The translations under genes were made by a program, and so were the position numbers. Source: Octopus sinensis (lineage: Eukaryota). Taken from it: DNA of 64,000 nt. The notes under the pieces are model-generated. The model saw only the letters and a list, made by a program, of their open reading frames with translations. It was not told the DNA's origin and did not search any database. Positions 6,392 to 47,100 of this stretch are shown here, piece by piece (positions within the stretch are counted from its first letter, which is position 1; every line of letters starts with the position of its first letter). The stretch covers positions 20,956,001-21,020,000 of the forward strand of contig NC_043018.1 in the NCBI RefSeq assembly GCF_006345805.1, read 5' to 3'.

Positions 6392-8281
6392 TAAAGACTC
6401 CGCCGGTTACGACGACGAGGGTCCCAGCTGATACGATCAACGGAACAGCTTGCTTGTGAAATTAACGTGCAAATGGCTGATCATTCCACAGACACGTGTA
6501 CCCTTAACGTAGTTCTCGGGGATAATCAGCGTGACACAGAGAGTGACAAGGCTGACCCTTTGAAATACAAGTACAACTCATTTTTGCCAGCTGAGTGGAC
6601 TGGAGCAACGTGAAATAAAGTGTCTTGCTCAAGGACACAACGCATCGCCGGGAATCGAACTCACAACCTTACGATCATGAGCCGAATGCCCTAACCACTA
6701 AGCCACGTGCCCTCACTATATATATATAGGGTGTCCATAAATTACAGACATCACTAAATATGTCCCCCAATGGTTGTTATATTTTTTTGATAACATGATA
6801 GGTTAGATAGGAGGATGTCTATATTACAATATTACAATAACCAATAATATGTTGTTGTTGTGCATGTATAGTAATATTACAATCATGAAATTAGAATTAC
6901 CTTACCTCACTCTTTTTCGCGGAACCCCTGTTGAGAAACGCTGGCTTATTGTATAACTTTTTGTATTTTTTTTTTCCTTTCTTAACCAGATAAAAGACCC
7001 CCTGCCTGTGCCTCTCTCATGTATCTGTCCAGGCCTGCAAGCTGAAGCCACTATTGTCAAAGTAAGTAACAACTATAGAAGTTGGTATGTATTTATGTGA
7101 TGATGGAAATTGACTTTCTGTCGTTACTATTTTATCCTCATTAACACCACTACCAACAGCATCATCATCATCATCTCTGACTTAAATCTGTCACAAGTCT
7201 ACACACAGACTGGATCTTATTCCAGTTTCCATGCTGTATCAGTGACCAAGAGTACAATACTCCAGTTCATCACAGAGTTAGCACTCTCCCCTCCACACCC
7301 TGGACAGGATGGCCAGTTCATCACAGAGTTAACACTATCCCATCTACCCACTGGACAGGATGGCCAGTTCATCCCAGAGTTAACACTCTCCCTTCTGTCC
7401 TCTGGACAGAATGGCCAGTTCATCACAGTTAACACTCTCCCTTCTGCCCCCTGGACAGGGTGACCATTCCATCACAGAGTTAACGCTCTCCCCTTCTGCC
7501 CCCTGAACAGGATGGCCAGTTCATCACAGAGTTAACACTCTCCCTTCTGCCCCCTGGACAGGATGGCCAGTTCATCACAGAGTTAACACTCTCCCTTCTG
7601 CATCCTGGACAGGGTGACCATTCCATCACAGAGTTAACACTCTCCCCTTCTGTTCCCTGGACAGAATGGCCAGTTCTTCACAGTTAACACTCTCCCTTCT
7701 GCCCCCTGGACAGGATGGCCAGTTCATCATAGAGTTAACACTCTCCCTTCCACCCCCCTGGACAGGATACCCAGTTCATCACAGAGTTAACTCTTCCCTC
7801 CACTCAACTGTTGTTTTGGTACTCATTTTCAGCTGAATCAACTGAAGCAATGCTCAAGAACACAATATGTTACCTGGACTGAGGACTGAAACCATGACCT
7901 TACTGTCATGAGTCCAACATTCTAACTACTAGGCCACATACCTTCATATATGTGTGTGTGTGTGTTTATGTATGTAATCCCAAATTTTATTTAATTTGCT
8001 TTGCGGGAAGGACGGTTTCAATGTAGTTGTGTATTGTCCTTGCCTTTGAAACGTGGAGTAGATGAAACAGGGGACAACTGATGAAGGGGAATATTCTTTA
8101 TGTTGTATGTCTTGTTTCTCTGTTTGTTTCTTTTGTTGTTCGAAAACAATGTTCGTTATCTACGTTTTTGTTTTTATGTTTTCGTTTCTCATTGTGTTCA
8201 ACGTTCTTTTGATGTCCTGTACCCATATATGCATGTATATATACAAATATATGTAGGTATATACATATATGTATGTACGTG

Positions 8282-8347
<66 letters not shown>

Positions 8348-8399
8348 GTATATATATATATATAATAGTATTATATGGTATATATATATATTATATGTG

Positions 8400-8430
<31 letters not shown>

Positions 8431-8510
8431 GTATGTAATGTACGTGTATTATATATATATAGTATATATGTGGATATATATATATATGTATAATATATAT
8501 ATGTATGTAC

Positions 8511-8594
<84 letters not shown>

Positions 8595-8751
8595 TGTATA
8601 TATATATATGTATATATATATATTGTATTATATATATATATAGATATTATATATGTATATATATATGTATGTATAATATATATATATATGATATATATAT
8701 ATATGTATATATATATAGTATATAGATATATATATATATATATATTATATG

Positions 8752-8789
<38 letters not shown>

Positions 8790-8799
8790 TATATGTATT

Positions 8800-8852
<53 letters not shown>

Positions 8853-11800
8853 TATATGTAGGTATCTACATATATGTATGTATATATGCATATATTTATA
8901 TATTATTTATATTAATATATGTAAAACAATGAGCACAAGAGAAACAAATTTTAACAATGCTGTATTAGTTCAATGTGTGTGTTTGTATAAACTATTATTT
9001 GTTGTTTTCCTTTTATTGCAGTAAAATCTCACTGTTTTTGTGATTTGTTTTCATTATTCATTGTTTTGTCTGGCAATACAAGAAATTATTATTATTATTA
9101 TTATTATTACACCACCAAGGTTGACTTTGCCTTTCATCCTTTCGGGGTCGATAAACTAAGTACCAGTGGAACACTGGGGTTGATGTAACTGAATACGCCC
9201 CTCCCCCAAAATTTCAGGCCTTTTGCCTATAGTAGAAAGGATTATTATTATTACATCACCAAGGTCAACTTGCCTTTCATCCTTTCGGGGTCGATAAATT
9301 AAGCACCCGTTACGCACTGGGATCGGTATAATCAACTAGCTCCCTCCCCCAAAGTTTCAGGCTTTGTGCCTATAGTAGAAAGGATTGTTATTATTATTAT
9401 TCTAGCAGCACCAAATTGACAGAATTGCTAGAACATCAACCAAAATGTTTAGCAGCAGTTCTTCTAGTTTTTTTTTTTTAGCGGGGTGGGGGTGGGGTCA
9501 ATAAATTAAGTACAGTTGAACACTGAGGATGATGTAATCAAATTCCCTTCCCTGAAAATGGCTGGCCTTTTTCCAAAATTTGAAGCCAGCAGTGTTATTA
9601 TTGTTAATGTGACATCGCCTGTCTTCACGATCTGAGTTCAAATTCCACCGATGTCAGTTTTGCCTTTCATCTTTTCAAGGGTCGATAAAATAAGGTACCA
9701 GTTGCATACTGGGCTTGATCTGATCGACTGGCACCCCCCCCCACCAAATTTCAGGCCTTGTGCCTATAGTAGAAAGGATTATTGTTAATCATCATCATCC
9801 TGTGTTTTAAATCCGGGTTTTGTCCCCGTGAATGGGGGTGACCAGATCTACCTCAGTGCCATAGCAATCAAGATAGGCAGGTGCACCTCACCGCAACCTT
9901 TGGGCTGGGTGTTGCCCTTTCTCCTTTGCTATCATGAGGCTTTTTTGGAGCTGAATTTTCAACAGGGAGCATGTCATTGCTTACCCGTAACCTCAGTTTC
10001 TTGAAATGAGTGGTCCCAAGACCAAGGCCTCTACCACAATTTTTAAGAAATGTGGTGGAAAACTAGTTTAGGAAGGCGGTGACCCTATTCCCTGAGACCC
10101 CTTTTGGAACACCCCTACTGAATGCGATATATATTTTTTTTCCTTATCAGCAGAAATAGTTGAGTATTATTCTAATACACACATGTATCTTAACATATCT
10201 TTCTGTATCATAGGATGAAGGTTCTTACTTGAAAGCTAAATTCCTGACATATGACGCTGTGATACCAAAATGTTATTGCAATCCCGATGAACAGGGACAT
10301 AAAGCAAATTCACAGGTACAGTAATATTTTCTTTAGTCAAAATTAATTATTAACCTTTACCCTGCATATACTCAGTTCTGTGCATGTGCTCTTGAAGCAT
10401 GGGAACCAAATTAACTTGTCCTTGATAGGAGAGTACACTCCAGAATTCTCCACACTTCATGACATTGTACATCATCATCATCAACGTTTAGCGTCCGCTT
10501 TCCATGCTGGCATGGGTTGGATGGTGCAACTGGGGTCTGGGAAGCCAGAAGGCTGCACCAGGCCCAGTCTGATCTGGCAATGTTTCTACGCCTGGATGCC
10601 CTTCCTAATGCCAACCACTCCATGGGTGTAGTGGGTGCTTTTTACGTGCCACCGGCACAGGTGCCAGACGAGGCTGGCAAACGGCCACGATTGGATGGTG
10701 CTTTTTACATGCCACCGGCACGGGGGCCAGGCGAGGCTGGCAAACAGCCACGATTGGATGGTGCTTTTTACATGCCACCGGCACGGAGGCCAGGCGCGGC
10801 TGGCAATGGCCACGATCGGATGGTGCTTTTTACGTACTACTGGCACTTCGTTTTTACTGGCCAATGGAAAGAGTTTGTGAGGACTGGTTTGCATATGATG
10901 ATCTGCATGTTATCACCATCCTCCATCATTTAACATCCATTTTCCATGCTGGCATGGGTTGGACAGTTTAACAGGAGATGGCAAGCCGGAGAGCTGCACC
11001 AGGCTCCAATTGCCTATTTTGGCATGGTTTCTACAGCTGGATGTCCTGAGTTCAAATTCCGCCAAGGTCAATTTTGCCTTTTATCCTTTCAGGATCAATT
11101 AAGTAAGTACCAGTTATGCACTGGGGTCAATGTAATCTACAGCTGGATTTCCTTTCTAACACCAACCACTTGTACTGGGTGCTTTCTATGTGTACCAGCA
11201 TAGGATCTTTTTTATGTGGCACCAGTCCAGGTGCTTTTTACATGCAAGAACTTAATCAGTACAGTGAAGGTTAATTATTAAAAAAAACTTCACCCATTTT
11301 ACATATTTCTCTTCTTTTATAATGTTTTTTCCTTATGTTTGTAGCAGAAACAATTTCTTTCCTTCTTGTAGAGAAACCTCTGGCCTTCTACTGATTTCTA
11401 TCTTCTATATTGTTTAGCAGCTAAGTTGTTGGCAACTGGATTAATATTCAAAGAGTCAGTAGTTTGTATCCTGTCCGTGTAACTCAATCATGTTTTGGGG
11501 TCAATACAGTTCTTTGCTAGATGCAAACTTCTGTGAAAACATATCCAGCCATTGTTCAAAGGACATGGGGAAATATTTACCTGGCTTGGAAACTGATGAA
11601 GGTTGACAACAGGAAGAGCATCTGGCTGTAAATAGTCTGCCTAAATGAATCTTTTTCATTTGACCCATGCCTGCATAGAAAAGTGGATGGCAGCAGCAGT
11701 GAGGATGATGATCATCATCACAATTGCATGGATTACTTAATTCACCAACATTATATTTCTATTGTTTTTAATTTACAGAAAGTTTCAAAAGTTACAACGG

Positions 11801-14800
11801 AAAGCTGCAAAATACTTTAACCCTTTAGTGTTCGCATTATTCTGCCAAAATTAATGCTTCTTCATCTACATTGTTTTGAACTAATCATGCATTATCTTGT
11901 AGCTATGAGATTTTGATGAGGTAGCTGTTAATTTTTTAAATAATATTGTAGGGTTGGTGTGAGAGACCAGATATGACTAGTTTAAACATAAAACAGGTAG
12001 AATATTTTTGGCCAGATATGGCCGGTTTAAATGCTAAAGGGTTAAGTGCAAAATTCTTTTATAATTTTCTGCCAATTAAAAATAAAATAATTGCAGCGTG
12101 GAAGGTGTTTATAAGCCATTTAAGAAACACACAAAACCGTTAGATTCACGTCAACATTTAAATTTAATTTGTCAAAATATCTTCGTTGCTTTGAGGCTGC
12201 GACTTGTTCACTGACAAAGCTTCGTGCTCCCAAAAATGTATATACTCACATATTGAGTTCTATAGCAATCCATATCCGTCACAGCACTGTATTGCATCTG
12301 TCACGAAGTACCACAGGGTTAGAACAGTTTAGAACTGTGATAGTAAGTGTTGCATTAGCTTGCAACAGTGTAGTCAATACCTTGATGTTGATTTATGGAG
12401 AGATGTGCTCAGCAAAATCGATTTATTGTAATATACTTTGTAAGCAGTTTTTTTTCTTTCTCATAATTGACAGGTCCGAGCCACTGTTCTTCAATACCAT
12501 CCTGAAACAAAGGTTATTACTCTGACTCTGAGAATGGTCTACAGCAGTGAAGTGTCTGAGATTTTCCCTGACATATTTATTGGTAAAATTATTAAAGGTG
12601 TTGTAAAGTACATCAGCTCAGAAAAGGAGATATATCTTCACCTTTCAAATGGACTTTGGGCAATTGCACATGTGAGTACACGGTTTTTTTTTATAATGAT
12701 AATATACATATTTGAAACAAGCCTTCCCTCTCTCTCATGCTCTTACTTCTTGACATCTGGTATAAGCCACCTTCTTGAATACCCATCCACCTCACCACTC
12801 AATCAAGAGGTTTTGTCTTACAAGCTACTTGGTTACCTCACTGGTGCTGGTGCTACAAAGAAGCACCCAGCACACTATAAAGTAGTTGGCATTGTCCTGG
12901 GGTTGATTTGTTCAACTAAAAACCCTTCAAAGCTGTGCTCTAGCATGGCCGCATTCAAATGACTGAAACAAGTAAAAGGTAAAAGATATAATAGATTCTC
13001 CCATTGGCTTCAACATGTGAGAGTGTACCAACCAATGTTTTCGCTGTTAGACGGTGAGTTGGCAGAAACGTTAGCACACCTGGTGAACTGCTTAGCAGTA
13101 ATTCATCTGCCATTCTGTTCTGAGTTCAAATTCTGCCAAGGTCAACTTTGTCTTTCATCCTTTCAGGGTCGATTAAGTAAGTACCAGTTATGCACTGGGG
13201 TCAATGTAATCGACTTAATCCCTTTCTCTGTCCTTGTTTGTGCCCTCTACGCTTAGCTCCCTGTGGGCAATAAGGAAATGAATATTTTTGTTGTTAGATT
13301 ACCCACACTGATGATTTGTGATAAACAGTGCATGACCTTGCAGGTGGGGCCCAGTTAGAATTTTCTTCAGGTCCAGTAGCCCATCCCACTCAAAAGGTCC
13401 CTGAATAAGAGTTATTTAAGGATGACAAATGAAACCCCTATGTTCCCGGAAGTGAATTACTCAAACCCCAAAATTCCCCTCAACACATGGCTATGGTCCT
13501 CCCCTACTACTACTTGTGGTCAGAAATGCACATATCGTCAGCCACTAAGGGACATGCTCAACTGGTCAAGCAACTATTGAGCAAATCTGTGGTATTGGTC
13601 ATGATAACACTTCATTATTATTTACATAATTTACATAGGCGCAGGAGTGGCTGTGTGGTAAGTAGCTTGCTAACCAACCACATGGTTCCGGGTTCAGTCC
13701 GACTGCGTGGCATCTTGGGCAAGTGTCTTCTGCTATAGCCCCGGGCCGACCAATGCCTTGTGAGTGGATTTGGTAGACGGAAACTGAAAGAAGCCTGTCG
13801 TATATATGTATATATATATATGTATGTGTGTGTTTGTGTGTCTGTGTTTGTCCCCCTAGCATTGCTTGACAGCCGATGCTGGTGTGTTTACATCCCCGTC
13901 ACTTAGCGGTTCGGCAAAAGAGACCGATAGAATAAGTACTGGGCTTACAAAGAATAAGTCCCGGGGTCGATTTGCTCGACTAAAGGCGGTGCTCCAGCAT
14001 GGCCGCAGTCAAATGACTGAAACAAGTAAAAGAGTATATCAGAATTGTTAATCCGCAACATTTTTTCCTTCTTCTCCAGCCTCCAGATCCCACTGCTCAA
14101 AAAAGATCTGCATTATTGAAAGCATACCCTGTTCTCTCCAAACACCGGTTAGTGTTGTATTTTTTTCCTGATATCTCGTTTCTTTTTTTTTCCTTTGATT
14201 GGCAGACCCGTTAGAGCATCACACAAAATACCTTGTGATATTTGTTCCTGTCCTTCACATTCTCAGTTCCAATGCCACTGCGGTCTACTTTGTCTTTCAT
14301 CTTTCTGGTTGGCTGTTGCTGTCAGAATAGGTATCTGACCCATGTAAGCATTGGGAAAATTGGTGTTAAAACAGTTTTGGTGATGGTGGTGACAGCGCAA
14401 TCAATTTAAACCTCTCCACCTAAAAAATGCTGGCCTTGTGCCAGAATTTGAAACCATTATTATTATTATTATTATTGGCGTTAGGAAGGGCATCCAGCTG
14501 TAGAACCACTGCCAGATCAGACTGGAGCCTGGTGCAGCCCCTGGCTTCCCAGACCCCGATCGAACCGTCCAACCCGTGCTTGCGCGGAAAATGGACGTTA
14601 AACGATGATGATGATGATTATTATTATCATCATCATTTTTATTATTATTATTATTAAGGTGGTCAGCTGGCAGAATCATTAACATGCCAGGTGAAATGCT
14701 TATTGGTCTTTATGTTCTGAGTTCAAATTCCACTAAGGTCAGCTTTGCCTTTCATCCTTTCGGGGTTGATAAAATAAATACCGGTGAAACACTGGGGTTG

Positions 14801-17800
14801 ATGCAATAGACTAGTCCTCTCTCACCAAATTTCAGGCCTTGTGCCTTAAGTAGAAAGGATTATTATTATTATTATCATCATTAAGGCAACGAGCTGGCAG
14901 AACCGTTAGCATGCTGAGCAAAATGCTCAGCAGCATTTCATCCATCTTTAGATTCTGAGTTCAAATTCCACCAGGATTAACTTTGCCTTTCATCGCTTTT
15001 GGAATTGATAAAATTAAGTACCAGTGGAACACTGGGATCACTGTAATCAACTGGTCCCCTCACCCAAAATTTCAGGCCTTGTGCCTGTAATAGAAAAGAT
15101 TATTATTATCTTTATATATAAAAGTAAGGTTGTGTGTCTGTCTCCTACGATTTAGATTCCTAACTACTCCCACATTTTGCGGTGCAGTTTAACCAAAACC
15201 GGGTATCTTATAGTCGTGATTCATATCGAGCCCTTCTGGGTATTAGCGCGCGTCTACGATGAGTCTACGATTTAAAAAAAAATTTACCATCATTTTTTTT
15301 CCATTTTAATGCATTTTTTCGCTATTATATAAGGAGAGTAACTCTCTAAAAATGTCTACGATGAGTCAACGATTTTAAAAAAAATTTACCATAATTTTTT
15401 TTCCATTTTTAATGCATTTTTTTGCTATTTTTTGGGTATAACTCTCTAAAAATGCTTATATAGTTATTTCCCTTACAAACCTGAGCAACGCCGGGCGATA
15501 CTGCTAGTTATTATTAAATTAATAATATTATATATGTGTATATAATTATATTATATGGTAGTTTTTTTTAAGGTATCAACGCTTCAAGCTTGCTGGGGAT
15601 AGGTCGTTTTCGCCCTTGCTCCCTTAATTTAATTATCTACATATGTGTATTATTATTAATTTAATGTATAAATTGCCTATAAAGTTTTATAGCATGCTGA
15701 CTACTGATAAAAATCATTAACGTGATTTTTATCCTTATATTCTGTTATTATTATTATTATTATTATTGTTGTTGTTATTTTTTAAAAATAAAATATGGTC
15801 CATTGTCTTCTGCTAAACTGGGATCATCCTTGACTCTAGGGTCACAGCAGGTCCTCATCTCATGGAGAGTACATGGCGTAAAATGTGTGCAGAACCTAGC
15901 AGCACTATTTTCTGAAGTTCTCCCACGTTAACACTGCAAGGGAGTTTGTTGAGCTGCTTATCAAGGCCCTTTTTAATTAGCCCTAATGCTCCAATCACCA
16001 CTGGTGCTGTGCTGCTTTTCATTCCCCACATCTTGGTCACTTATATTTCTAGGTCTTTGTACTTAAATAACTTCTCAACTTCTTTAATGGACACATTTCT
16101 CTCTGATGGTTCTGTCACATCTATCATTAAACATTTCTTATTCTTCCCATCTTTGATGATTATGTCTGGCCTGTTTTCCTTGATTTCTTTATCGGTATTG
16201 ATTGGCATGTCCCAGAGTACTGTTACATCATCTTTTCTGGTCACAGTTTCAGGTTTATGCTGGTAGTGTTTACATATCTTCCAATGGATGTATTGCGCTA
16301 CTCTATCATTTCTATGAATATATTCGGTGTTTTTTATTATTATTTTTCTATTATCTTTTTCAGATGCTGTGTAATGAAATTGTTACCTCTTGAAAATTTA
16401 GTTGAAGTTTGTCTCAGCTGGTTGGTATTAAAACAAATTACAGTTTAAGAAATTAATTATTTTTTCTTTTAGATTTATTTACTTTTATCTTTTCTTAACC
16501 ATTTTCTCAACTATCACCCTTTCTTTAAAAGAATAGTTTTTCACTATTTCTCTGGCTGTTTTTTTTTTCTCTCTTTCTCTCTTTTTTCCTTTCTGTCGAA
16601 GAGCATTGACTCGAAATCTAAAAGACTTTCTCACTTCCCCGCATTAAACTAATACATCTGTTTGTTTATACACCCGACTTCATCTTTTGTTTTTTTGTAA
16701 ATTCTCCCTATGTATGTATATATATATATATGCATACACGCGAAATATATCTATCGTGTATATAGTATATACAAATGTATCTTTTTTGACATAGGAAACC
16801 CAATAAACCAAATTCAGAATCTTCAGCTCTGAAAGACACTCTCCCAGCTGATGAATCAAAGGTATGTGGTACTTACTTTATTCCCTCCTACTTTTAATTT
16901 CTTTGAGTGGTTTGTGGTGTACATCTCACTGGCATCATATCTCACTAGCCTTCCTCCACACTTGACCCCACCCCTTCTGTTAACTATTAAAAAAAATATT
17001 GTGATAATCTTTAACCCTTTCGTTACCAACCCACTTGAAATTGCCTCTGGCTCTGTAGTACAAATATCTTGTTTTCATAAGTTCTGAATCAAGATATTCC
17101 TAACACTAGCTGAATGTTATATTTAAAAGAAGTGAAAGAAACACAGCATCTCAAAATAAATATGGTAACAAAAGGGTTAAGCAGCCTTTAGAGAGGGTGT
17201 ATGTTCTTTGTCTCCCTTTTATATTCTACTCTTCTCTCCTCTTGATTTGCACATCGGGCAGATGCTTAGTAGAATTTCTTCCAGTTTTTCACATTTTGAG
17301 TTCACATCCTGCTATGGTTAACTTTGCCTTTCATCTTTCCAGGGTCGATAAAATGAAGTGCCAGTCAAGTAATCGACTTGTCTCTTCTCCTCAAAATTGC
17401 TGGCCTTGAACTATGCAATAGAATGACATCCTATTCAGGAGTATTTTAGTGATCTTATTTCTTTACTGCCCACAAGGGGCTAAACACAGAGAGGACAGAC
17501 AAACGGATTAAGTCGATTATATCGACCCCAGTGCATAACTGGTACTAAATTTATCGACCGCAAAATGATGAAAGGCAAAGTCAACCTCAGCGGAATTTGA
17601 ACTCAGAACGTAGCGGCAGGTGAAATACCGCTAAGCATTTCGCCCAGTGTGCTAACGTTTCTGCCTGCTCGCCGCCTTATTTTAGTGATCTTGGTCATTT
17701 GTATGCACGGGAAGTATGCAGCCAGCCTTATGGATCCTTATGCGGGGTGAAAAGTTATACAAATCACAAATTTCCTCAGAGTCTAAGTTTAACCCGAAAT

Positions 17801-20800
17801 TATTTTATAATGTATTGCTTCACCCTATGTTGTAAGTTCTGGTCTCTCATACATTAGTTAAATAAATCCCGATAGTATAATAGTCGACCATCATCATTTA
17901 ACATCCGTTTTCCATGCTGGCATGAGTTAGATGGTTTGACTGGAACTGGTAAGCCAGAGAACTGCACCAAGTTCCAGTCATTTGTTTTGGCTGGGTTTCT
18001 ACAGCCTGATGCCCTTCCTAATGCCAACCACTTTACAGAGTGTACTGGGTGTGTTTTATGTGGTGTCAGCACAGGTGCCTTTTACCTGTTACCAACACAG
18101 GTACCTTTTGCAAGTGGCCACAACCATGATTTCAGCTTGTCTTCCCAAGCACAGCAGATCACCAGAGGTCTCAGTCACTTACAATAATAATTATATTGGT
18201 TTGTTACAGACAAAAGTGCCAGAAATACAGAAAGAAGTCAAATCAAAAAAAAATGCTGACATTGCTAAGCCAGAAGTGGAAGAGGTGAGTTTTGCTGTTA
18301 AATTCTGTAAAATATCGAGTTTATGAGATTTGCTTCTTTTATTTTTTTTAACCAGCTGCTTATTTACACTCCGTTAATTAGATAAGCTCCTTTTTTTATT
18401 TGATGTCTGCATATTTTCCGTGGTATCATAAGTTTGGTTGGAGGTTTACTTGAGGCGGAATTTTCAGTCAGATGCTCTTCCTGTTGCCAACCCTTACATG
18501 TTTTTTTCTACATGTCTTTGAATGTGTAGAGCAGTGGTTTTCAACCAGGGTTCCGCCAGTACAGTTCAGGGGTTCCGCAAGAAGTTACAAAACTGCTAAA
18601 ATCGGCAGTAATTTTTAATTCTCCTGTGCAGATATGTGTGCATAAGACTATTAAATTATTGCACAGGGGTTCCTCGAGCCAGTGGAATGTTTCCTTGGGG
18701 TTCCACTCCAGCAAAAAGCTTGAAAAGCACTGGTGTAGAGCAACCAGTCATAATATCAATAAGGAACATCAACATCACCATTGTTTCCTTGAAACAGAAG
18801 CAAAGATGAACATGGAATACATGTTTACATTGATGCTCATTTGCAAGCATGCACGAACGCATATATGCACATAGGTGCTTCGTGCAGTTTCTGTCTTGTA
18901 GATTGCCCATCACAATGGTCAAACCTATAACACTATGGTAGAAGACACAGCTATTGCAAAGACATTTATCCAGTGTGTTATGCAGTGGGACTGAACCCAA
19001 AACCATGTGGTTGTCATGCGGGTTTCTTAACCTTGCAGCAATGCCTGTAAATCAGTAAATTAATCACTTAGCTCTGGATTTGTACCTGAAAACATATATT
19101 GCATACATCGACACTAGTATAGTGGGGGCGGGGCATCCACCCTGGGTAGCACTTTTAAAGGGGTACCACTTTTAGGTCTGCTGTTGATAATATGTGCTTC
19201 TTGTGGTGTCCGGAGGTGGCACACACTCTAGCTACCCCAGTGCACAACGAAAATGTACAGAAAATAGACTCCATCAACTGCCAGACAGGCCTCCGTGCCG
19301 GTGGCACGTAAAATGCAACATTCGATTGTGGCCGTGTGCTAGCCTTGTCTGGCACCTGTGCGGGTGGCACGTAAAAAGCACCCACCACACTCACGGAGTG
19401 GTTGGCATTAGGAAGGGCATCCAGCTGTAGAAACACTGCCAGATCAGACTGGGCCTGGCACAGCCTTCTGGCTTCCCAGACCCCAGTTGAACCATCCAAC
19501 CTATGCTAGCATGGAAAGCACACATTAAACACTGATGATGAATTCAATATTATATTGTAGGTATTTATTTAAGCAATATGAGGGGACCAGAACCTACATC
19601 ATCACCAACCCATGGATGTTACTCTCACAAGTCCTGCTTAACCTATTCTTATTCTCATAGCTATGCTCTCGGAGCATCCACCTCTGCTACTAATTTGGTC
19701 ACCTAGATAACAGAAGCTATCTACTACATCATCATCATACATCCGTTTTCCATGCTAGCATGACTAATAATATTGATTTTTTTTATGGTTTGTTGCAGAC
19801 AAAACCCCCCAAAACACGGAAAGAAGCAAAGTCCAGAACTGTTGAGATTGTTAAACAGGAAGTGGGAGAGGTGAGTCTCGGTGTTAAATTCTATGACATT
19901 TCCAGTTCACAACTCTATCCTGTCATAAGATATCAGTTGCTTTGATGGTTAAGAGATTTCAGGAATTATAAATCATTGAAATATTAAAATGACATGTTTA
20001 TGAGATTAGAGAGGGGGGAGGGGGTCAGACTTAGCTTTGTCTTGTCGCTTGCTTTCAGTTGATTGACCAATTGCAAAGACTTGTGGAATATAAAATTCCA
20101 TTACCTGAAAAAATAGGTTGATGATTGGTGGCCAACAGAGAGTCTGACCCTAAGACGTTGCCTTATAATCAATTCCCACTGAAGTCTTGCTAGCATGGAA
20201 AAACGGACATTAACCCTTTAGTATTCAGTTTACTCTATCAAATGTAAAACTTATTTATTCATATTTTTTTTAGAATGACAGGGTTGATGTGAGGGGCTGG
20301 ATCTGGCCAGTCTTAACATAAAATGCGACCAGATATGACCATTTCAAATGTTAAAGGGTTAAACAAACTGTAACCCATGGTCTTTCATAGAGTTTCTATC
20401 TACCAGTTTCACTCACAAACTATTGGTTAGCTCAAGGTGCCACGCAGAGAGATAGAACTCAGGTCCTCTTGGTAGCAAATCCAACTCCATGTCCACACAG
20501 TATTGCCCTCACCCTATCTATATTATTTAGTTTCAACCTACATTCTAGAATTAGCCCTCTCCATTCTCCTCTATGGAACAGAAACGTAGCCCCTCTCAAT
20601 GATCCTTGTTTTCTTTACTGCCCACAAGGGGATACACACAGAGGGGACAAACAAATTAAGTCGATTATATCGACCCCGAAATGATGAAAGGCAAAGTGGA
20701 CCTCGGTGGAATTTGAACTCAGAACATAACGGCAGACGAAATACGGCTACACATTTCGCCCAGCGTGCTACTGTTTCTGCCAGCTCGCCACCTCAATGAT

Positions 20801-23800
20801 CCTGGCAAAGAAGATCCATGGCTTTGATAGCAGATCCCTGGGAACCATTGAGAACATCAGATGGTACCATCACGCTTCCAACAAAGAACTGCATGCATGC
20901 ACGCATCAATGCACAGCCTCCCACCTGGTAACTATCTGTCACGTGCTGGTACAGACATGTCCTCCATCTCCCGTGGGATCATAGTACCAGGGCTTTACTC
21001 TCATACGACACAGCAGTTGCAGACTGGAAGAAGCCTCATGGCAGGCCCTGCACCAAATGGCTGGAAGTGATTAAGGAAAATCTCCAAAGGCTTGACGTCA
21101 CCTTGGAGGATGCAGAGGGGCTGGCACGGGACCACCAGCAATGGAGAGCACTGCTGAACCTGGGACTACCCCAGCCCCATGAAGCAGCAGCAGCTACATT
21201 CTAGAGCAGTGCTTTTCAGACTTTTTGCTGGAGCAGAACCCCAAGGAAACATTCCACTGGCTCAAGGAACCCCTGTGCAATAATTTAATAATTTAATAGT
21301 CTTATGCACGCATAAGGAGTGGCTGTGTGGTAAGTAGCTTGCTAACCAACCACATGGTTCTGGATTCAGTCCCACTGTGTGGCATCTTGGGCAAGTGTCT
21401 TCTGCTATAGCCCCGGGCCGACCAATGCCTTGTGAGTGGATTTGGTAGACGGAAACTGAAAGAAGCCTGTCGTATATATGTATATATATATATATATGTG
21501 TGTGTGTCTGTGTTTGTCCCCCTAGCATTGCTTGACAACCGATGCTGGTGTGTTTACGTCCCCTTCACTTAGCAGTTCGGCAAAAAGAGACCGATAGAAT
21601 AAGTACTGGGCTTACAAAGAATAAGTCCCGGAGTCAATTTGCTCGACTAAAGGCGGTGCTCCAGCATGGCTGCAGTTAAATGACTGAAACAAGTAAAAGA
21701 GTAAAAGAGATATCTGCACAGGAGACTTTAAAATTTCTGCCGATTTTAGCAGTTTTGTAACTTCTGGCAGAACCCTAAGGTTCCGCAGAACCCTGGTTGA
21801 AAACCGCTGTTCTAGAGTTTTGATCCCTCATGTTTCACTTAACTAAGCACCTGTGCTATACTATGCAATTCATCAATGTTACTTTTATTGGTTTGTTGCA
21901 GACAAAAATACCAGAAATAGAGGAAGAAGAAACATCTACCAAAAATGGTAATGTGGTTAGCCATGAAGTGGAAGAGGTGAGTGTTGGGGTTAATTGCTCT
22001 AAAATTCATACAATATTCTTTGTATTAACCCTTTCATTAACGTATTTATTTTGAGATGCTCTCTGTTTCTCTCAATTATTTTAAATATAACAAAAAAATT
22101 TAGCAAAATAACTTAGTTATCATTAAGTTAGTGTTAGGAACATAAATTGTGACTAAGATTTGGTGGAAGATTAATTCAAAACTTATGAAAACAAGACATT
22201 TGTACTACGGAGCCAGAGCTGGTTTCAGCCGGGTTAATAACGAAAGGGTTAATGATAGCTCCTTGTTGACACTTTCCAATGCATTGTAGACTTCTAATTA
22301 CAATAGGGCTTTCTGGGTCTGTGTTATATGATTATGCTAAAGGGGTACACATGCTACAGCAAAAAACTTAGATGATTTCACACACTGCAAACATGCATAG
22401 ATACATACATGCGCACACATATACACGCACACACATACATACAAAAATTATGTCCTTGCTCAAAGTAAGATATCATCAATGTCATCTTTACTACTACTAC
22501 TTTTACCATCACCATCACTACTACTACTGGTTTTGATCTGTTGCAGGCTGAAGAATCAAGAAGTGAAATAACGGAATTGGCAAATCTAAGTAAAATTGGA
22601 AAGGTGAGTTTCAGTGTTTTGTACAGCTGTAGTTTCCATGGCGTATATATTCCCCACCTGGATGGGACACTAGTCCTTCACAGGATTACTCACTTTTGCC
22701 AGCTGAGTGGACTGGAGCAATGTGAAACGAAGTGTTTTTGCTCAAGGACATAAAGCATCGCCCGGTCTGGGAATCGAAACCACAATCTTACGATCATCAG
22801 TTCAACACCCTATTCACAGAGTAGAATAAAACAAACCAATATTCTTGTTTTATTTATGTATATATATATATATATATATTTTTTTTTTCTTTCAACAGGT
22901 ATCTCGTGCTACTATACACAAGAAACTGGAAGACAGCTTCACAGTGCTTTTGGCATCATCAGGGAAAGTTGGTGTGCTACCCAAGATGCATCTGTCTGAT
23001 TTTCAAAGCCATTGTGATATGTTATGGGACATCTACAGCGAAGGGGACATGATGCGAGTTGTCAACTTTAAACACCTTAACAAAACCACTGTATCCTTTT
23101 TTTTCTTTTCTTTTCTCTTTTTGTTTTTTTTTAAGACTAGTGAGGTGTAAACATAAATGTTTGGTATTTATGTTTTTATTTATATAGACTAAGGAGGAAC
23201 AGGATGGTCATGGTGGGGATCATTGTGGCTATCATCATCATCATCATCATCTAACATCCATCTTTCATGCCGGCATGGTTTGGATGGTTTGACAGGATCT
23301 GATAAGCCAGCAACTATGCCAAGCTCCACTCTCTCTTCAATTACTGCTTCCCATTTGCTTGGCAGACGGTCAGACTATCATTTACTCTTACTCTTTTACT
23401 TGTTTCAGTCATTTGACTGCGGCCATGCTGGAGCACCGCCTTTAATCGAGCAACTCAACCCCGGGACTTATTCTTTTGTAAGCCCAGTACTTATTCTATC
23501 GGTCTCTTTTGCCGAACCGCTAAGTGACGGGGACATAAACACACCAGCATCAATTGTCAAGCAATGCTAGGGGGACAAACATACACACATATATACATAT
23601 ATACGACGGGCTTCTTTCAGTTTCCATCTACCAAATCCACTCACAAGGCCTTGGTCGGCCCGGGGCTATAGTAGAAGACACTTGCCCAAGGTGCCTCGCA
23701 GTGGGACTGAACCTGGAACCGTGTGGTTGGTAAGCAAGCTACTTACCACACAGCTACTCCTGTGCTTATAATGAACAATTTCGTAAGATAACATTGTCAT

Positions 23801-41100: not shown

Positions 41101-44100
41101 TTTCGTCTGCGTTACGTTGTGAGTTCAAATTCCGCCGAGGTCGACTTTGCCTTTCATCCTTTCGGGGTCGATAAATTAAGTACCATTTACGCACTGCGGT
41201 CGATGTAATCGACTTAATACCTATGTCTGTCCTTGTTTGTCCCCTCTGTGTTTAGCCCCTTGTGGGTAGTAAAGAAATAGGTTTGACTGAAAACTGGTAA
41301 GCCGGGGAACTGCACCAGGTTCCGATCTGACTTGACAAGGTTTCTACAGCAGGATGCCCTTCCTAACACCAACCCCTTTTTTTATGTGCCACCAGCATGA
41401 CACTGGCATCGACCGCAACTATGGTCTCACTTGACTTCACAGGTCTATACAAACACAGTATATTGCCAAAGGTCTCAGTCACCTGTCACTGCTTCCATGA
41501 GGCCCAACACTTGAACAGTGCTTATTAGGTGCCACCCGCGTGTGACATTTTTGTTACCCCCTTGATGGGATGCCGGTCCCTTGCAGTAATACTCAACTTC
41601 TGCCAGCTGGAGCTACATCAAATAAAGTGTTTTGCTCAAGAACACAATATATTACTCAGTCTGGGAATTGAAACCACAATCTTGCAATCATAAGTGCAAC
41701 ACCCTACCTACTAGACCAGTGGTTTCCAACCTGGGATCTGCGGACCCTGATGGTCCACAAAGGCAGTACTGGGGGTCCATGAACTAAATTCAAAATTTCA
41801 TATATACATCAAAATCAAATGGTAATGGTAGTTGTGGATGATGCCAGTGCCGCCTGACTGGCTCCCTCTGTTGGTGGCCCGTAAAAAGCACCATTTGAAC
41901 GTGGTTTGTGCCAGCCCCCTTGCCCCAACAGGCTCCTGTGCCGGTGGCACATAAAATGCACCATCTAAACGTGGTCGATGCCAGTGCCGCCTTGACTGGC
42001 TCCCATGCCAGTGGCACATAAAAAGCACCATCCGAACGTGGTCAATGCCAGCCCCTCCTGGCCCCTGTGCCGGTGGCCCGTAAAAAGCACCATTTGAACA
42101 TGGTTTGTGCCAGCCCCCTTGCCCCAACAGGCTCCTGTGCCGGTGGCACATAAAATGCACCATCTAAACGTGGTCGATGCCAGTGCCGCCTTGACTGGCT
42201 CCCATGCCAGTGGCACATAAAAAGCACCATCCGAACGTGGTCAATGCCAGCCCCTCCTGGCCCCTGTGCCGGTGGCCCGTAAAAAGCACCATTTGAACAT
42301 GGTTTGTGCCAGCCCCCTTGCCCCAACAGGCTCCTGTGCCGGTGGCACATAAAATGCACCATCTAAACGTGGCCGATGCCAGTGCCGCCTTGACTGGCTC
42401 CCATGCCAGTGGCACATAAAAAGCACCATCCGAACGTGGTCAATGCCAGCCCCTCCTGGCCCCTGTGCCGGTGGCCCGTAAAAAGCACCATTTGAACGTG
42501 GTTTGTGCCAGCCCCCTTGCCCCAACAGGCTCCTGTGCTGGTGGCACATAAAATGCACCATCCGAACGTAGTCAATGCCAGCCCGTCCTGGTCCCTGTGC
42601 CGGTGGCACGTAAAAAGCTCCCACTACACTCTCGGAGTGGTTGGTGTTAGGAAGGGCATCCAGCTGGATAAGCACTGCCAGATCAGATTGGAGCCTGGCA
42701 TGGCCTCCCGAGTTCCCAGACCCCAGTCGAACTGTCCAACCCATGCCAGCATGGAAAATAGACATTAAACGATGATGAGGAGGATATATACACATATGGA
42801 TAAGCATATTAACCCTTTAGTGTTCAGATTATTCTATCAAACATAATGCTTATTGATTCACATTGATTTGAATTAATCATGAATTATCTCATATCTTCAA
42901 GATCTTGATGGTGTAATTACTTAATGTAGAATAACATTGTAGGGCAGGTGTGAGAGCCTGGATCTGGTCAGTTTGAACATAAAACAGATTAACTATTTTG
43001 GCCGGATATGGCCGGTTTAAAGGCTAAAGGGTTAAAAGGGGTCCATGGGAAAACTCATTTAAATAAAAGGGTTGGGAACAACTGTACTGAAGCACCCGCC
43101 TTCACACATGTTGCTTTGATAAGTAGAAATCCAGTTGATCAGACAACTAAATGCTCATCATTAAAATTTACTTTCTGTGTTTTTCCGCTGAGTAAATGCA
43201 TCGAAAATGGATTTCGTTCTGAATGTTTTCAGTGAACCAAAAACTGCAAGAATTAGTGATAAAGGTAGTCAGCTGTTTGAAGCAATGGATGTTGATACTA
43301 CAGACCCCACACTCCCGGAAAGCTCAAAGTCGAGGAAGAAGAAGAAAACAGCAATGAAACGAAAGTCTAATGGTTACATTGGTAGTGATGATGATGATGC
43401 TGCCGGTACTGGAAAGAAGTGCAAGCTGGACCTGAAAAGGTAAATTCTGTTTCAAAAAAATAAGAAAAGGTGGTGAGTGAGTGCAAAGCATATTCTTATA
43501 TTGCATGTGCCTGGCTGTGTATGCTATAAAATTGAATATCTTTATATATAAAAGTCAAGTTGTGTGTCTGTCTCCTACGATTTAGATTCCTAACTACTCC
43601 CACATTTTGCGGTGCAGTTTAACCAAAACCGGGTATCTTATAGTCGTGATTCATATCGAGCCCGTCTGAGTATTAGCGCGCGTCTACGATTTTAAAAAAA
43701 ATTACCATCATTTTTTCCATTTTAATGCATTTTTTTTGCTATTATATAAGGGAAGTAACTCTCTAAAAATGTCTACGATGAGTCAACGATTTAAAAAAAA
43801 ATTTACCATCATTTTTTTTTCCATTTTTAATGCATTTTTTTGCTATAACTCTCTAAAAATGCTTATATAGTTATTTCCCTTACAAACTCGAGCAACGCCG
43901 GGCGATACTGCTAGTTTCATATAATCTAGTGGTTCTCAACCATATTTTGCCCATGCACCCCTTTAATCTCTGTCTCACTCTACGAGACCCCCCACATTAA
44001 AAAAAAATCCTATTAAGAAGCTTGCTTCCCAACCACATGGTTCTGGGTTCAGTCCCACTACGTGGCACCTTAGACAAGTGTTTTCTACTATAGCCTCGGG

Positions 44101-47100
44101 CCAACCAAAGCGTTGTGAGTGGATTTGATAGATGGAAACTGAAAGAAGCCCATCGTGTGTATATATATATATATGTATGTATGTGCTTGTCGTTTGTGTC
44201 TGTGTTTGTCCCCCCGCCACCATCACTTGACAACCAATGTCAGTGTGTTTACGTCCCTGTCGCTTAGTGGTTCGGCAAAAAGAGACCGATAGAATAAGTA
44301 CTAGGCTAACAAAGAATAAGTCCCGGGGTTGATTTATTTGAACAAAGGTGGTGCTCCAGCATGGCCGCAATCAAATGACTGAAACGAGTAAAAAAGTAAT
44401 TAAGTATTATCAGGAATTATGCTGCGCTGCATAAAATACACTCTGTAAAATGGTTAACAACCAGCCACAGAAACCATGCCGAAACAGACAGCTCCAGCTG
44501 GCCAGCTCATGCCAATATGGAAAATGGGCGTTAAATGTTGATGATGATGATGATGTATTAAAAAATTGTTAAAATATTTTGTGTATTGTGTATAGGCGTA
44601 GGAGAGGCTGTGTGGTAAGTAGCTTGCTTACCATCCACATGGCTCCGGATTCAGTCCCACTGCGTGGCACCTTGGGCAAGTGTCTTCTACTATAGCCTCG
44701 GGCCGACCAAAGCCTTGTGAGTGGATTTGGTAGACAGAAACTGAAAGAAGCCCGGCGTATATGTGTATATATATGTGTGTGTGCGTGTATGTTTGTGTGT
44801 CTGTTTGTCCCCCTAGCATTGCTTGACAACCGATGCTAGTGTGTTTATGTCCCCGTAACTTAGCGGTTTGGCAAAAGAGACCGATAGAATAAGGACTGGG
44901 CTTACAAAGAATAAGTAAGTCCCGGGGTCGAGTTGCTCGATTAAAGGCGGTGCTCCAGCATGGCCGCAGTCAAATGACTGAAACAAATAAAAGAGTATTT
45001 ATGGAATTTTGATTTACTGTCGGCTGACTTTTGGCCAACCCTGTATTAATCTCCTTCAGACCTGTCCTTTATGATTATTCATTATACTTTATTTTCTACG
45101 TTTAATCCAAAGCACAGATATGACTGTGTGGTTAAGTGTTCACTTTGTAACCATGTGGGTTTGGGTTCATTCCCACTGAGTAACACTTTGGGCAAAGTGT
45201 TTTATAATGTATTTCCTTCCCCTACATAATTATTTGTGTGTGTGTGTCGTGTGTGCATCCTGTAGTGATGGGCATCAACTTAATGTCAACAAATACTCAG
45301 ATCTTGTGTTTTTTCTCTTTTTTTCCTTTCTAAAGCCAATTGAAGTTATGCCTCCTGTCTTCTTCAACTGGGATAATGAAGCCGTTGCCCCAACAACCCA
45401 GAACGGTCATGTCAGCAGCAGTGATGACGACGTTGAAATGAGCGAAGACAAGGATGAAGAATCATCTACAGGTGTAAGTATTTTTGATTTGTTTTCTTCA
45501 TATGCTAAGCCTCACTGAGGGTATGGCAAGGGACCAGGACTTATGGCGCTAAGCCTCACTGAGGGGATGGCAAGGGACCAGGACTTATGGTGCTAAGCCT
45601 CACTAAGGAGATGGCAAGGGACCAGGACTTATGGCACTAAGCCTCACTGATGAGATGGCAAGGGACCAGGACATATGGTGCTAAGCCTCACTGAGGGGAT
45701 GGCAAGGGACCGGGACTTATGGCGTAAGCCTCACTGAGGGGATGGCAAGGGACCAGAACTTATGGTGCTAAACCTCACTGAGGGGATGGCAAGGGACCAG
45801 GACTTATGGCGCTAAGCCTCACTGAGGGGATGGCAAGGGACCGGGACTTATGGCGCTAAGCCTCACTGAGGGGATGGCAAGGGACCAGGACTTATGGCAC
45901 TAAGCCTCACTCAGGGGATGGCAAGGGACTGGGACTTATGGCACTAAGCCTCACTGAGGGGATGGCAAGGGACCGGGACTTATGGCACTAAGCCTCACTG
46001 AGGGGATGGCAAGGGACCGGGACTTATGGCACTAAGCCTCACTGAGGGGATGGCAAGGGACCGGGACTTATGGCACTAAGCCTCACTGAGGAGATGGCAA
46101 GGGACCAGGACTTATGGCGATTTGCTGTATTTGAGAAGACACATCAAGCTAAGAAAAATTGCAGCCCTCCATACATACAGGCATGTCCTTTATGGTCACG
46201 CCTCCACTCCCTCTCCGAGCTGAGAGGTGTTTGTCTTGCAGGGGCCAGTACCACATAAAACGCACTTCTGCCAATGCCACATAAATTGCAATTGGACCAG
46301 TGTCATGTAAAAAGCACCCAGCACATTTCGTAAAGTGGTTGGTATTAAGAATGTCATCCAGCCATAGAAACCTTCCCTAAACAGACAATCAGAGCCTGGA
46401 CAGTGTTCCAACTGGCCAGCTCCATGCCGAACCGTCTGACCCATACATACACACATATAAAGTGTTTGTAAAGTTATTGTGATGTTAACTTGATAAATCA
46501 GGACAGACTGACTCCTAACCAAATCTCTTACCTGTTCCTACCTCTAATTGCATCTTCTTCATTTAAATCAATTATTGATCGTTTATACACATCTCCTGTA
46601 CAAATTATTGTTTTCTTATCTACCTGCAATATTCTTAATTTTACAGAAACTTCTCAAGAAAAAGAAAGCTGCTAGGAAGCTTGAAAAAAAACAGGAAGAA
46701 GAAAGGTTATATGAAGTAAGTACATAGGTTGTTTCTCCCTCATGAACCCTTTCTATTCCATTATCTCATAGCTTTCAGATTTCAGTTATGTCATTGTATA
46801 CTTATAGAATGACATTGTTGGGTAGGTATGAGAGGCTGGATCTGGCAGCTTTGAACATAAAACAAGTAGAATATTTGAGCTGGTTCAACCCTTTAGCATT
46901 CAGTGTTTTGAATTAGTCATACATTATCTCATAGCTTTTGATATTTCAGTTATGTGATTGTATAGGCGCAGGAGTGGCTGTGTGGTAAGTAGCTTGCTAA
47001 CCAACCACATGGTTGCGGGTTCAGTCCCACTGTGTAGCATCTTGGGCAAGTGTCTTCTGCTATAGCCCCGGGCCGACCAATGCCTTGTGAGTGGATTTGG

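What the first reader, a model, noticed from the sequence alone, without database searches (positions are those of the whole stretch)
18195..22010. Three tandemly duplicated symmetric exons inside RRP5
Seen: exons 11, 12 and 13 (75, 72, 75 nt; all phase 0/0) share TK.P....E....EV(E/G)E peptides. They also share homologous acceptors (tggtttgtt(a/g)cag|ACAAAA) and donor-side intron sequence (GAG|gtgagt...gtta), which shows they arose by genomic duplication of one exon with its flanks. Their net charge differs: A is mixed, B is basic, C is acidic. I do not recall such a repeat in RRP5 orthologues. Inference: a lineage-specific cassette or mutually exclusive exon array could tune the charge and length of a disordered linker in an essential ribosome-assembly factor.
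Basis: partly seen in the sequence, partly recalled or inferred. Interest (0 to 1): 0.75.

Follow-up and report, generated by a model that had tools for sequence, protein, structure and literature searches.

The report
Triplicated small linker exon in RRP5
A small protein-coding exon of the ribosome-assembly gene RRP5/PDCD11 has been copied three times in a row, splice signals included. This lengthens a flexible, charged spacer between two RNA-binding domains; it is a real but fairly ordinary tandem exon duplication, with no sign of a one-of-three splicing switch.

Summary
Three exon-like units lie at 18210-18284, 19799-19870 and 21902-21976 (75/72/75 nt, phase 0/0). They share the acceptor TGGTTTGTTRCAG|ACAAAA and the donor GAAGTGGRAGAG|GTGAGT. 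Each motif occurs exactly three times in the window, against 0.06 expected by chance.

Across the three copies, 35 of 37 splice-proximal positions are invariant, against 28 of 57 in the exon cores (p=2e-6). Introns beyond about ±30 nt are unalignable. This indicates an old DNA-level exon duplication in which each copy has kept working splice signals.

My spliced model reads in frame from an RRP5-type S1 domain, through exon 10, A, B, C and exon 14, into the next S1 domain. A profile of the three units also picks out exon 14 (22547-22603) as a probable diverged fourth copy (E=0.02).

The cores evolve almost neutrally (dN/dS 0.4-1.3), so the charge differences (0, +3, -6) look like drift in a disordered, K/E-rich linker.

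Mutually exclusive splicing is not supported. The introns are 1.5-2 kb, all splice sites are U2-type, all lengths are multiples of 3, and no docking/selector complementarity exceeds shuffled controls. Cassette use is possible but untestable here, because no cephalopod transcripts or orthologues could be reached. The finding is a new member of a known kind and of modest interest.

The parts
12474..12671 (+). Exon carrying the end of one S1 domain and the first half of the S1 domain that precedes the linker (tentatively S1-5).
   Evidence: Open frame, acceptor ttgacag| and donor CAT|gtgagt. Spliced to the next two exons it matches Pfam PF23459 S1_RRP5 over positions 4-72 of 72, E=2.9e-5.
14080..14147 (+). 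68-nt exon, the middle of the same S1 domain.
   Evidence: Strong polypyrimidine acceptor and donor CCG|gttagt. It is needed for the full-length S1_RRP5 match.
16364..16420 (+). 57-nt exon, the end of the same S1 domain (...[10 protein letters not shown]).
   Evidence: Only the donor at 16420 (CTG|gttggt) keeps exon 10 open, and the Pfam match ends here.
16795..16861 (+). Exon 10, the first linker exon ([22 protein letters not shown]). It ends in phase 0 and is not homologous to the repeat.
   Evidence: donor AAG|gtatgt, 8 of 9 consensus positions.
18182..18209 (+). Conserved acceptor-side intron flank of copy A. The last 13 nt are TGGTTTGTTACAG.
   Evidence: 12 of 13 positions invariant across copies.
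18210..18284 (+). Copy A: 75-nt exon, phase 0/0, [25 protein letters not shown], net charge 0.
18285..18313 (+). Conserved donor-side intron flank of copy A (GTGAGTTTTGCTGTTAAATTCTGTAAAAT).
19771..19798 (+). Conserved acceptor-side intron flank of copy B (TGGTTTGTTGCAG).
19799..19870 (+). Copy B: 72-nt exon, phase 0/0, [24 protein letters not shown], net charge +3. It has one in-frame 3-nt deletion relative to A and C.
19871..19899 (+). Conserved donor-side intron flank of copy B (GTGAGTCTCGGTGTTAAATTCTATGACAT).
21874..21901 (+). Conserved acceptor-side intron flank of copy C (TGGTTTGTTGCAG).
21902..21976 (+). Copy C: 75-nt exon, phase 0/0, [25 protein letters not shown], net charge -6.
21977..22005 (+). 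Conserved donor-side intron flank of copy C (GTGAGTGTTGGGGTTAATTGCTCTAAAAT). A repeat element is inserted from 22021.
22547..22603 (+). Exon 14: 57 nt, phase 0/0, [19 protein letters not shown]. It is the last linker exon, leads into the next S1 domain, and is a probable diverged and shortened fourth paralogue.
   Evidence: The nhmmer profile hit 22521-22618 has E=0.021, aligns to profile positions 3-118, and is the only hit below E=1 besides the three copies. A pairwise score test was only marginal (p about 0.03).
22899..23084 (+). Exon carrying most of the next S1 domain (VSRATIHKK...LPKMHLSD...). The 3' end is approximate.
   Evidence: The S1-like pattern was read by eye; the hydropathy falls on the folded side. 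The donor was not fixed.

Best explanation
This is an old tandem duplication, at the DNA level, of one small symmetric (phase 0/0) coding exon together with about 30 nt of intron on each side. It produced three clear copies (A, B, C), and the neighbouring exon 14 is probably a fourth. The array lies in the linker between two S1 RNA-binding domains of the RRP5/PDCD11 gene, roughly the 5th and 6th.

Shown: each copy has kept an intact reading frame, a canonical AG acceptor and a near-consensus GAG|GTGAGT donor. The positions next to the splice junctions are almost invariant, while the exon cores and the rest of the introns have diverged.

Inferred: all three are recognised by the spliceosome and are mostly spliced in series. 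Together they add 74 residues of K/E/T/P-rich, probably disordered spacer to a linker of about 115 residues.

The peptide cores drift almost neutrally. The different net charges are therefore more likely a by-product of relaxed constraint on a permissive linker than a tuned property.

Because every exon from A to exon 14 is symmetric, skipping any of them keeps the frame. Cassette-type variation is therefore possible. Nothing in the sequence enforces a one-of-three choice.
For: Homology and chance: (3 hits each against 0.06 expected).

Conservation pattern: 35 of 37 splice-proximal positions are invariant against 28 of 57 core positions, Fisher p=1.7e-6.

Introns versus exons: unique intron segments beyond ±30 nt show no similarity (z<=1.2). 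The exon cores remain similar for A-B (z=5.5) and A-C (z=8.2).

In-frame model: the chain from S1 through exon 10, A, B, C and exon 14 to the next S1 reads in frame with no stop (855 nt). The upstream S1 is validated by PF23459 S1_RRP5 over 4-72/72.

Gene identity: several S1 matches plus C-terminal HAT repeats, and a 44%-identical hit to crocodile 'protein RRP5 homolog'.

Splice-site strength: A-C fall in the range of the other exons of the gene, with donors matching 8 of 9 consensus positions and polypyrimidine content 0.61-0.72.

Other points: the only length difference is an in-frame 3-nt indel. The linker composition is on the disordered side of the charge-hydropathy boundary, whereas the flanking S1 exons are on the folded side. 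Yeast Rrp5 can be physically cut between S1 domains 4/5, 5/6, 6/7 or 7/8 and still complements almost fully (PMC6800521), so this part of the protein tolerates changes in its connections. About 10% of animal genes carry tandemly duplicated exons (PMC9013439).
Against: No transcript evidence was reachable, so inclusion of each copy in mRNA is inferred from sequence only.

Retention of the open frame is weak evidence on its own: a crude neutral simulation leaves all three open in 17% of runs.

dN/dS near 1 would also fit non-coding sequence, if one ignores the conserved splice signals.

Copy A has the poorest polypyrimidine tract of the exons examined (0.61, longest run 3).

The B-C core similarity is not significant by itself (z=1.6).

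Inverted repeat-element pairs bracket exon A, exon B and the whole array, and could promote skipping.
Confidence: 0.6

Rival explanations
1. Regulated cassette exons. One or more of A, B, C are alternatively included, giving up to eight linker isoforms that differ in length (0-74 residues) and net charge (-6 to +3). This would modulate how the N-terminal and C-terminal S1 blocks of RRP5 are spaced or interact.
For: All exons from A to exon 14 are phase 0/0, so every combination is in frame. The exons are short (72-75 nt), sit in 1.3-2 kb introns, and have modest polypyrimidine tracts. The invariant purine-rich blocks (AAGAAG, GAAGTGGAAGAG) and the conserved intron element about 20 nt past the donor look like splicing enhancers. 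Inverted repeat-element pairs bracket exon A (17853-18079 / 19351-19577), exon B (18527-18739 / 21200-21814) and the whole array (17007-17180 / 22025-22256). Such pairs are known from Alu-mediated looping-out to favour skipping or back-splicing (my own knowledge).
Against: There are no transcript data. The splice sites are as strong as those of the other exons of the gene. The cores evolve near neutrally, which argues against isoform-specific protein function. Inverted repeat pairs are expected by chance in a window that is 54% repeats.
Confidence: 0.25
2. Mutually exclusive exon cluster: exactly one of A, B, C is included per transcript, as in Dscam exon 6 or 14-3-3zeta.
For: These are tandem homologous exons of near-equal length and identical phase, with conserved intronic flanks that could in principle act as selector sequences (concept in PMC6071210).
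Against: The introns of 1514 and 2031 nt rule out steric exclusion. All sites are U2-type GT-AG. All lengths are multiples of 3, so joint inclusion would not trigger NMD. The best common docking window is -18.3 kcal/mol, against a mean of -15.1 and a minimum of -18.2 for shuffled selectors; it lies inside a repeat element within intron B-C, not in the flanking introns. The segment is a domain-free linker where nothing requires exactly one copy.
Confidence: 0.04
3. One or more copies are dead relics (pseudo-exons) that are never spliced into mRNA. The real linker is shorter.
For: dN/dS is about 1 and there is no third-position bias. Frame retention is not statistically compelling (p about 0.17). 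No database protein contains the A-B-C peptide, although the database lacks this organism.
Against: A dead copy should lose its splice signals at the same rate as its core. Instead, 35 of 37 junction-proximal positions are invariant in all three copies while half of the core positions have changed, and the surrounding intron is unalignable. The only indel is in frame.
Confidence: 0.1

Closest known systems
Tandem exon duplication in animal genes (Letunic et al. 2002, as summarised in PMC9013439)
   Same: Adjacent exons of one gene are homologous at the DNA level, splice-site flanks included, and have the same phase and nearly the same length. The copies have diverged since.
   Different: This is a short exon in a disordered inter-domain linker, not part of a folded domain. 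The junction-proximal nucleotides are far better conserved than the coding core.
Repeat-encoding symmetric mini-exons of elastic or disordered regions, such as the titin PEVK exons (from my own knowledge, not tested)
   Same: Small exons of about 75-84 nt with lengths that are multiples of 3. Each encodes one P/E/V/K-rich unit of about 25-28 residues in an unstructured spacer, multiplied by exon duplication. The length of the spacer can be set by how many are included.
   Different: There are only 3-4 copies. The gene is a nucleolar ribosome-assembly factor. Differential inclusion is not shown here.
Mutually exclusive exon clusters controlled by docking/selector RNA pairing (Dscam exon 6, 14-3-3zeta, MRP; PMC6071210)
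   Same: Origin by tandem duplication of an exon with intronic flanks. Short conserved intronic elements sit next to every copy.
   Different: No docking site was found. The exons code for a linker rather than an interchangeable part of a fold. Nothing enforces exclusivity.
Exon looping-out by inverted repeat elements in the flanking introns (Alu-pair mediated skipping or circularisation; from my own knowledge)
   Same: Repeat-element copies 75-92% complementary, in opposite orientation, in the introns on either side of exon A, exon B and the whole array.
   Different: This is purely a sequence observation. The window is 54% repeats, so such pairs are expected by chance. No skipped or circular RNA evidence exists.

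Membership tests
Tandemly duplicated exons | Neighbouring exons of the same gene with sequence similarity beyond chance. | tested here: met
   A-C 79% over 134 nt and A-B 76.6% over 111 nt. Both motifs occur 3 times against 0.06 expected. nhmmer E=4e-37 to 9e-36 for the three copies, which built the profile and so match it by construction.
Tandemly duplicated exons | Similarity extends into the intron flanks, indicating duplication of genomic DNA rather than convergence of peptides. | tested here: met
   12 of 13 positions upstream and 6 of 6 plus 11 of 18 downstream are invariant. The blast hits run from -28 to +29.
Tandemly duplicated exons | Same phase and compatible length, fitting the reading frame of the flanking exons. 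| tested here: met
   Lengths 75/72/75 nt, phase 0/0. The spliced model is open from S1 to S1.
Mutually exclusive exon cluster | Exactly one exon of the cluster is present in each transcript. | not testable with these tools
   No transcript or orthologue data were reachable.
Mutually exclusive exon cluster | A mechanism that enforces exclusivity: an intron too short to splice, U2/U12 incompatibility, or a frameshift with NMD on double inclusion. | tested here: not met
   The introns are 1514 and 2031 nt. All donors are GTGAGT and all acceptors are YAG. All lengths are divisible by 3.
Mutually exclusive exon cluster | Competing RNA structures: one docking site complementary to a selector next to each variant. 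| tested here: not met
   The best common duplex is -18.3 kcal/mol for the donor-side flank (shuffled selectors: mean -15.1, minimum -18.2) and -14.3 for the acceptor-side flank (shuffled: mean -12.9, minimum -15.9). The candidate sites lie inside repeat elements in intron B-C. The scan was coarse (40-nt windows, 20 shuffles).
Cassette (skippable) exons | Symmetric exon whose omission keeps the frame. | tested here: met
   A, B, C and exon 14 are all phase 0/0.
Cassette (skippable) exons | Observed transcripts with and without the exon. | not testable with these tools
   No RNA data.
RRP5 / PDCD11 gene | Long N-terminal array of S1 RNA-binding domains. | tested here: met
   PF23459 S1_RRP5 (25 bits against a cut-off of 27, full-length 4-72/72) and PF00575 S1 (25.7 bits against a cut-off of 22) on spliced exon models. 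Further S1-like exons were read by eye.
RRP5 / PDCD11 gene | C-terminal HAT/TPR repeat domain. | tested here: met
   HAT_PRP39_N, Suf, HAT_Syf1 and TPR_14 lie above their cut-offs on the exons at 49-56.5 kb.
RRP5 / PDCD11 gene | Best database relatives are RRP5 orthologues. | tested here: met
   The only hit was crocodile 'protein RRP5 homolog', E=4e-35, 44% identity over 90% of the C-terminal query. The database is poor in eukaryotes.

The most novel reading that the evidence does not exclude
The three (or four) symmetric linker exons are independently regulated cassettes of an essential ribosome-assembly factor. Their inclusion would be governed by competing long double-stranded RNA stems formed by the inverted repeat elements that bracket exon A, exon B and the whole array. 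The result would be a set of RRP5 isoforms whose inter-S1 spacer varies from about 41 to 115 residues and from acidic to basic, a lineage-specific way of modulating pre-rRNA processing.
Probability: 0.1. Interest if true: 0.55.

Novelty: new member of a known kind. Interest (0 to 1): 0.27.

Why it matters
If the exons are simply included together, this is a clean, datable example of how a disordered inter-domain linker grows by exon duplication. Selection is visible almost only on the splicing signals and not on the peptide. That is useful as an illustration but does not change any view of RRP5.

It would matter more if RNA data showed regulated inclusion. An essential, normally invariant ribosome-biogenesis factor would then have lineage-specific isoforms differing in linker length and charge, at a junction where the yeast protein can be cut without much loss of function.

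Tried and rejected
1. Protein database search with the concatenated A-B-C peptide found no hit. The C-terminal HAT exons found only a crocodile RRP5 fragment. The database therefore lacks this organism and its relatives, and the negative result says nothing about expression.

2. PDB sequence search with the spliced S1-linker-S1 model found only weak bacterial S1 hits and no PDCD11/Rrp5 alignment. The linker could not be placed on the human or yeast protein.

3. Two metagenome scans were empty: a DNA pattern spanning acceptor to donor, and the S1 exon peptide.

5. Docking/selector search by duplex folding did no better than shuffled controls.

6. RNAalifold on the three units gave only a weak consensus (-11.3 kcal/mol). 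It showed an invariant small hairpin over the acceptor, and one exon-intron helix with two compensatory pairs from only three sequences. This is not interpretable.

7. ORF retention as evidence of coding is not significant (17% under a crude neutral model).

8. A shared SINE head upstream of A and B was considered as evidence of a larger duplication unit. I rejected this: by my own count on the sequence, the two fragments are about 89% identical (33 of 37 nt), more alike than the exons, as expected of independent insertions of one family.

9. Rfam search of the whole window found nothing, including no intronic snoRNA.

10. The pairwise score test for exon 14 as a fourth copy was marginal (p about 0.03). 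The profile search was clearer (E=0.021).

11. The exact ordinal of the S1 domains flanking the linker was not settled. The exons between 7 and 12.4 kb could not be modelled with confidence.


Full report
**What is there**

Reading 17800-22400 shows three exon-like units on the + strand:
- A at 18210-18284 (75 nt)
- B at 19799-19870 (72 nt)
- C at 21902-21976 (75 nt)

They translate without stops to [49 protein letters not shown] and [25 protein letters not shown]. Each is preceded by TGGTTTGTT(A/G)CAG and followed by GTGAGT plus a partly conserved stretch of about 20 nt (GTTAAATTCT).

The 19-nt acceptor motif and the 18-nt donor motif each occur exactly three times in the 64 kb window on both strands, even allowing three mismatches. 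About 0.06 matches are expected by chance.

A self-comparison of the window finds A-C at 79% over 134 nt and A-B at 76.6% over 111 nt, and no further copy. The net charges are 0, +3 and -6.

**Gene context**

The + strand carries an RRP5/PDCD11-type gene.
- S1-domain exons start at about 656, and HAT-repeat exons lie at 49-56.5 kb.
- The C-terminal exons hit only one database protein, a crocodile 'protein RRP5 homolog' (E=4e-35, 44% identity). They match HAT/Suf/TPR Pfam families above their cut-offs.

I built the local exon chain by hand: 12474-12671, 14080-14147, 16364-16420, exon 10 at 16795-16861, then A, B, C, then exon 14 at 22547-22603, and the next S1 exon from 22899.
- The chain is 855 nt and is open throughout.
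- Its first 106 residues contain a full-length match to Pfam S1_RRP5 (positions 4-72 of 72, E=2.9e-5), which validates the upstream part of the model.
- Exon 10 ends in phase 0, and A, B, C and exon 14 are all phase 0/0.

The repeat therefore lies in a domain-free linker of about 115 residues between two S1 domains. These are roughly the fifth and sixth, counted from the S1-1-like exon at 656-835. The count is tentative, because the exons between 7 and 12.4 kb were not resolved.

By charge and hydropathy, the linker exons fall on the disordered side of the Uversky boundary. The flanking S1 exons fall on the folded side.

**A probable fourth copy**

A profile built from the three units with their flanks was searched over the whole window on both strands. 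It gave only one further hit below E=1, and that hit is exon 14 with its flanks (22521-22618). The hit has E=0.021 and aligns end to end with gaps summing to 18 nt. A simple pairwise score test was marginal (p about 0.03). I regard exon 14 as a probable diverged and shortened paralogue, possibly the ancestral exon, since it leads directly into the next S1 domain.

**Are the copies live exons?**

The strongest evidence is the pattern of conservation.
- Across the three copies, 35 of the 37 positions next to the splice junctions are invariant. These positions are 13 nt of intron plus 6 nt of exon at the acceptor, and 12 nt of exon plus 6 nt of intron at the donor.
- Only 28 of 57 core positions are invariant (Fisher p=1.7e-6).
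- Unique intron segments beyond about ±30 nt show no residual similarity (z<=1.2). The exon cores are still recognisably related for A-B and A-C (z=5.5 and 8.2), but not clearly for B-C (z=1.6).

A dead copy would lose its splice signals as fast as its core, so each copy appears to be under selection to be spliced.

Further points agree with this. The single length difference is an in-frame 3-nt deletion in B. Splice-site quality is within the range of 16 other exons of the gene: donors match 8 of 9 consensus positions and polypyrimidine content is 0.61-0.72.

Against over-reading:
- Retention of the open frame alone is not significant (17% in a crude neutral simulation).
- The cores show no coding-type constraint. 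dN/dS is 0.41, 0.83 and 1.26, with no excess of third-position changes.

The invariant internal blocks (AAGAAG, GAAGTGGAAGAG) are purine-rich. They may be conserved as splicing enhancers as much as for the K/E residues they encode. This last point is an inference.

**How it most likely works**

The best-supported reading has four elements:
- An old tandem duplication of a small symmetric exon with its splice signals.
- All copies are still spliced, usually in series.
- Together they extend a flexible, highly charged spacer between two S1 domains.
- The peptide is under weak constraint, so the differences in charge are most simply drift.

[quoted passage not shown] This fits a junction that tolerates insertions. 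Domain numbering between yeast and animals need not correspond.

Tandemly duplicated exons are common; about 10% of animal genes have them (PMC9013439).

**Alternative splicing**

Mutual exclusivity is not supported by anything in the sequence.
- The introns between the copies are 1514 and 2031 nt.
- All sites are U2-type.
- Double inclusion does not shift the frame.
- A duplex scan of the whole exon 10 to exon 14 interval, run separately for the conserved donor-side and acceptor-side flanks, found no common docking site better than shuffled selectors gave. The best donor-side candidates also lie inside repeat elements in intron B-C.
- RNAalifold on the three units gives only a weak, mostly invariant consensus.

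Cassette-type skipping is possible because all the exons are symmetric, but it cannot be tested here. The protein database contains no cephalopod RRP5 and two metagenome scans were empty.

One feature could bear on skipping. Repeat elements in opposite orientation bracket the exons:
- exon A: 17853-18079 against 19351-19577
- exon B: 18527-18739 against 21200-21314 and 21710-21814, 90-92% complementary
- the whole array: 17007-17180 against 22025-22256

Such pairs can loop out exons in other systems. In a window that is 54% repeats they are also expected by chance.

**Verdict**

- The genomic duplication and the linker location hold.
- The mutually exclusive idea fails the testable criteria.
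- Cassette use and lineage specificity remain open.
- 'Charge tuning' is weakened by near-neutral evolution of the cores.

This is a new member of a well-known kind of event and deserves modest interest unless RNA data show regulated inclusion.

Noticed in passing
window 17007-17180 vs 22025-22256; 17853-18079 vs 19351-19577; 18527-18739 vs 21200-21314 and 21710-21814: Inverted pairs of repeat elements (75-92% complementary, arms of 30-98 nt in several blocks) lie in the introns on either side of the whole A-C array, of exon A and of exon B. In pre-mRNA they could form long duplexes that loop out exons (skipping, circular RNA, editing substrates). In a window that is 54% repeats they may equally be chance.
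   Followed up: partly
window 18527-18745 and 21200-21814: A roughly 220-nt element with terminal inverted repeats (TAGAGCAGTGGTTTTCAACC...GCACTGGTGTAGAGC), MITE-like, sits in intron A-B. A copy in the opposite orientation in intron B-C is split by a nested insertion of about 400 nt of another repeat.
   Followed up: partly
window 18197-18221 (and the same positions in B and C): The invariant acceptor region can form a small hairpin, GG-UUGUU-RCA-GACAA..CC, that holds the 3' splice-site AG at the loop/stem boundary and uses the CC of the conserved proline codon. All positions are invariant, so covariation cannot test it.
   Followed up: partly
window 19853-19870 (copy B, IVKQEVGE) and 18264-18284 (copy A, IAKPEVEE): The conserved C-terminal end of the repeat resembles a SUMOylation consensus followed by acidic residues: psi-K-x-E is perfect in B, weaker in A and lost in C. 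This is recalled from general knowledge and was not tested.
   Followed up: no
window 45504-46119: A tandem array of a 44-nt unit, 14 copies at 93% identity, lies in an intron of the C-terminal linker region of the gene.
   Followed up: no
window 41857-42618 and 7262-7799: Two further intronic tandem arrays: a 199-nt unit (3.6 copies, 97% identity; about 70-nt sub-repeat) related to the abundant SINE-like repeat of the window, and a 51-nt unit in 10.6 copies.
   Followed up: no
window 8225-8920: About 700 nt of degenerate (AT)n / (TATG)n microsatellite inside an intron, which accounts for the GC dip to 0.29 at 8-10 kb.
   Followed up: no
window 57900-61000: Downstream of the last RRP5 exon (stop near 56.5 kb) lie several long open frames on both strands. 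They include reverse-transcriptase-like text (60326-60934 +) and a 164-residue frame at 57939-58430 (-). These are probably retroelement remains and not part of the gene.
   Followed up: no
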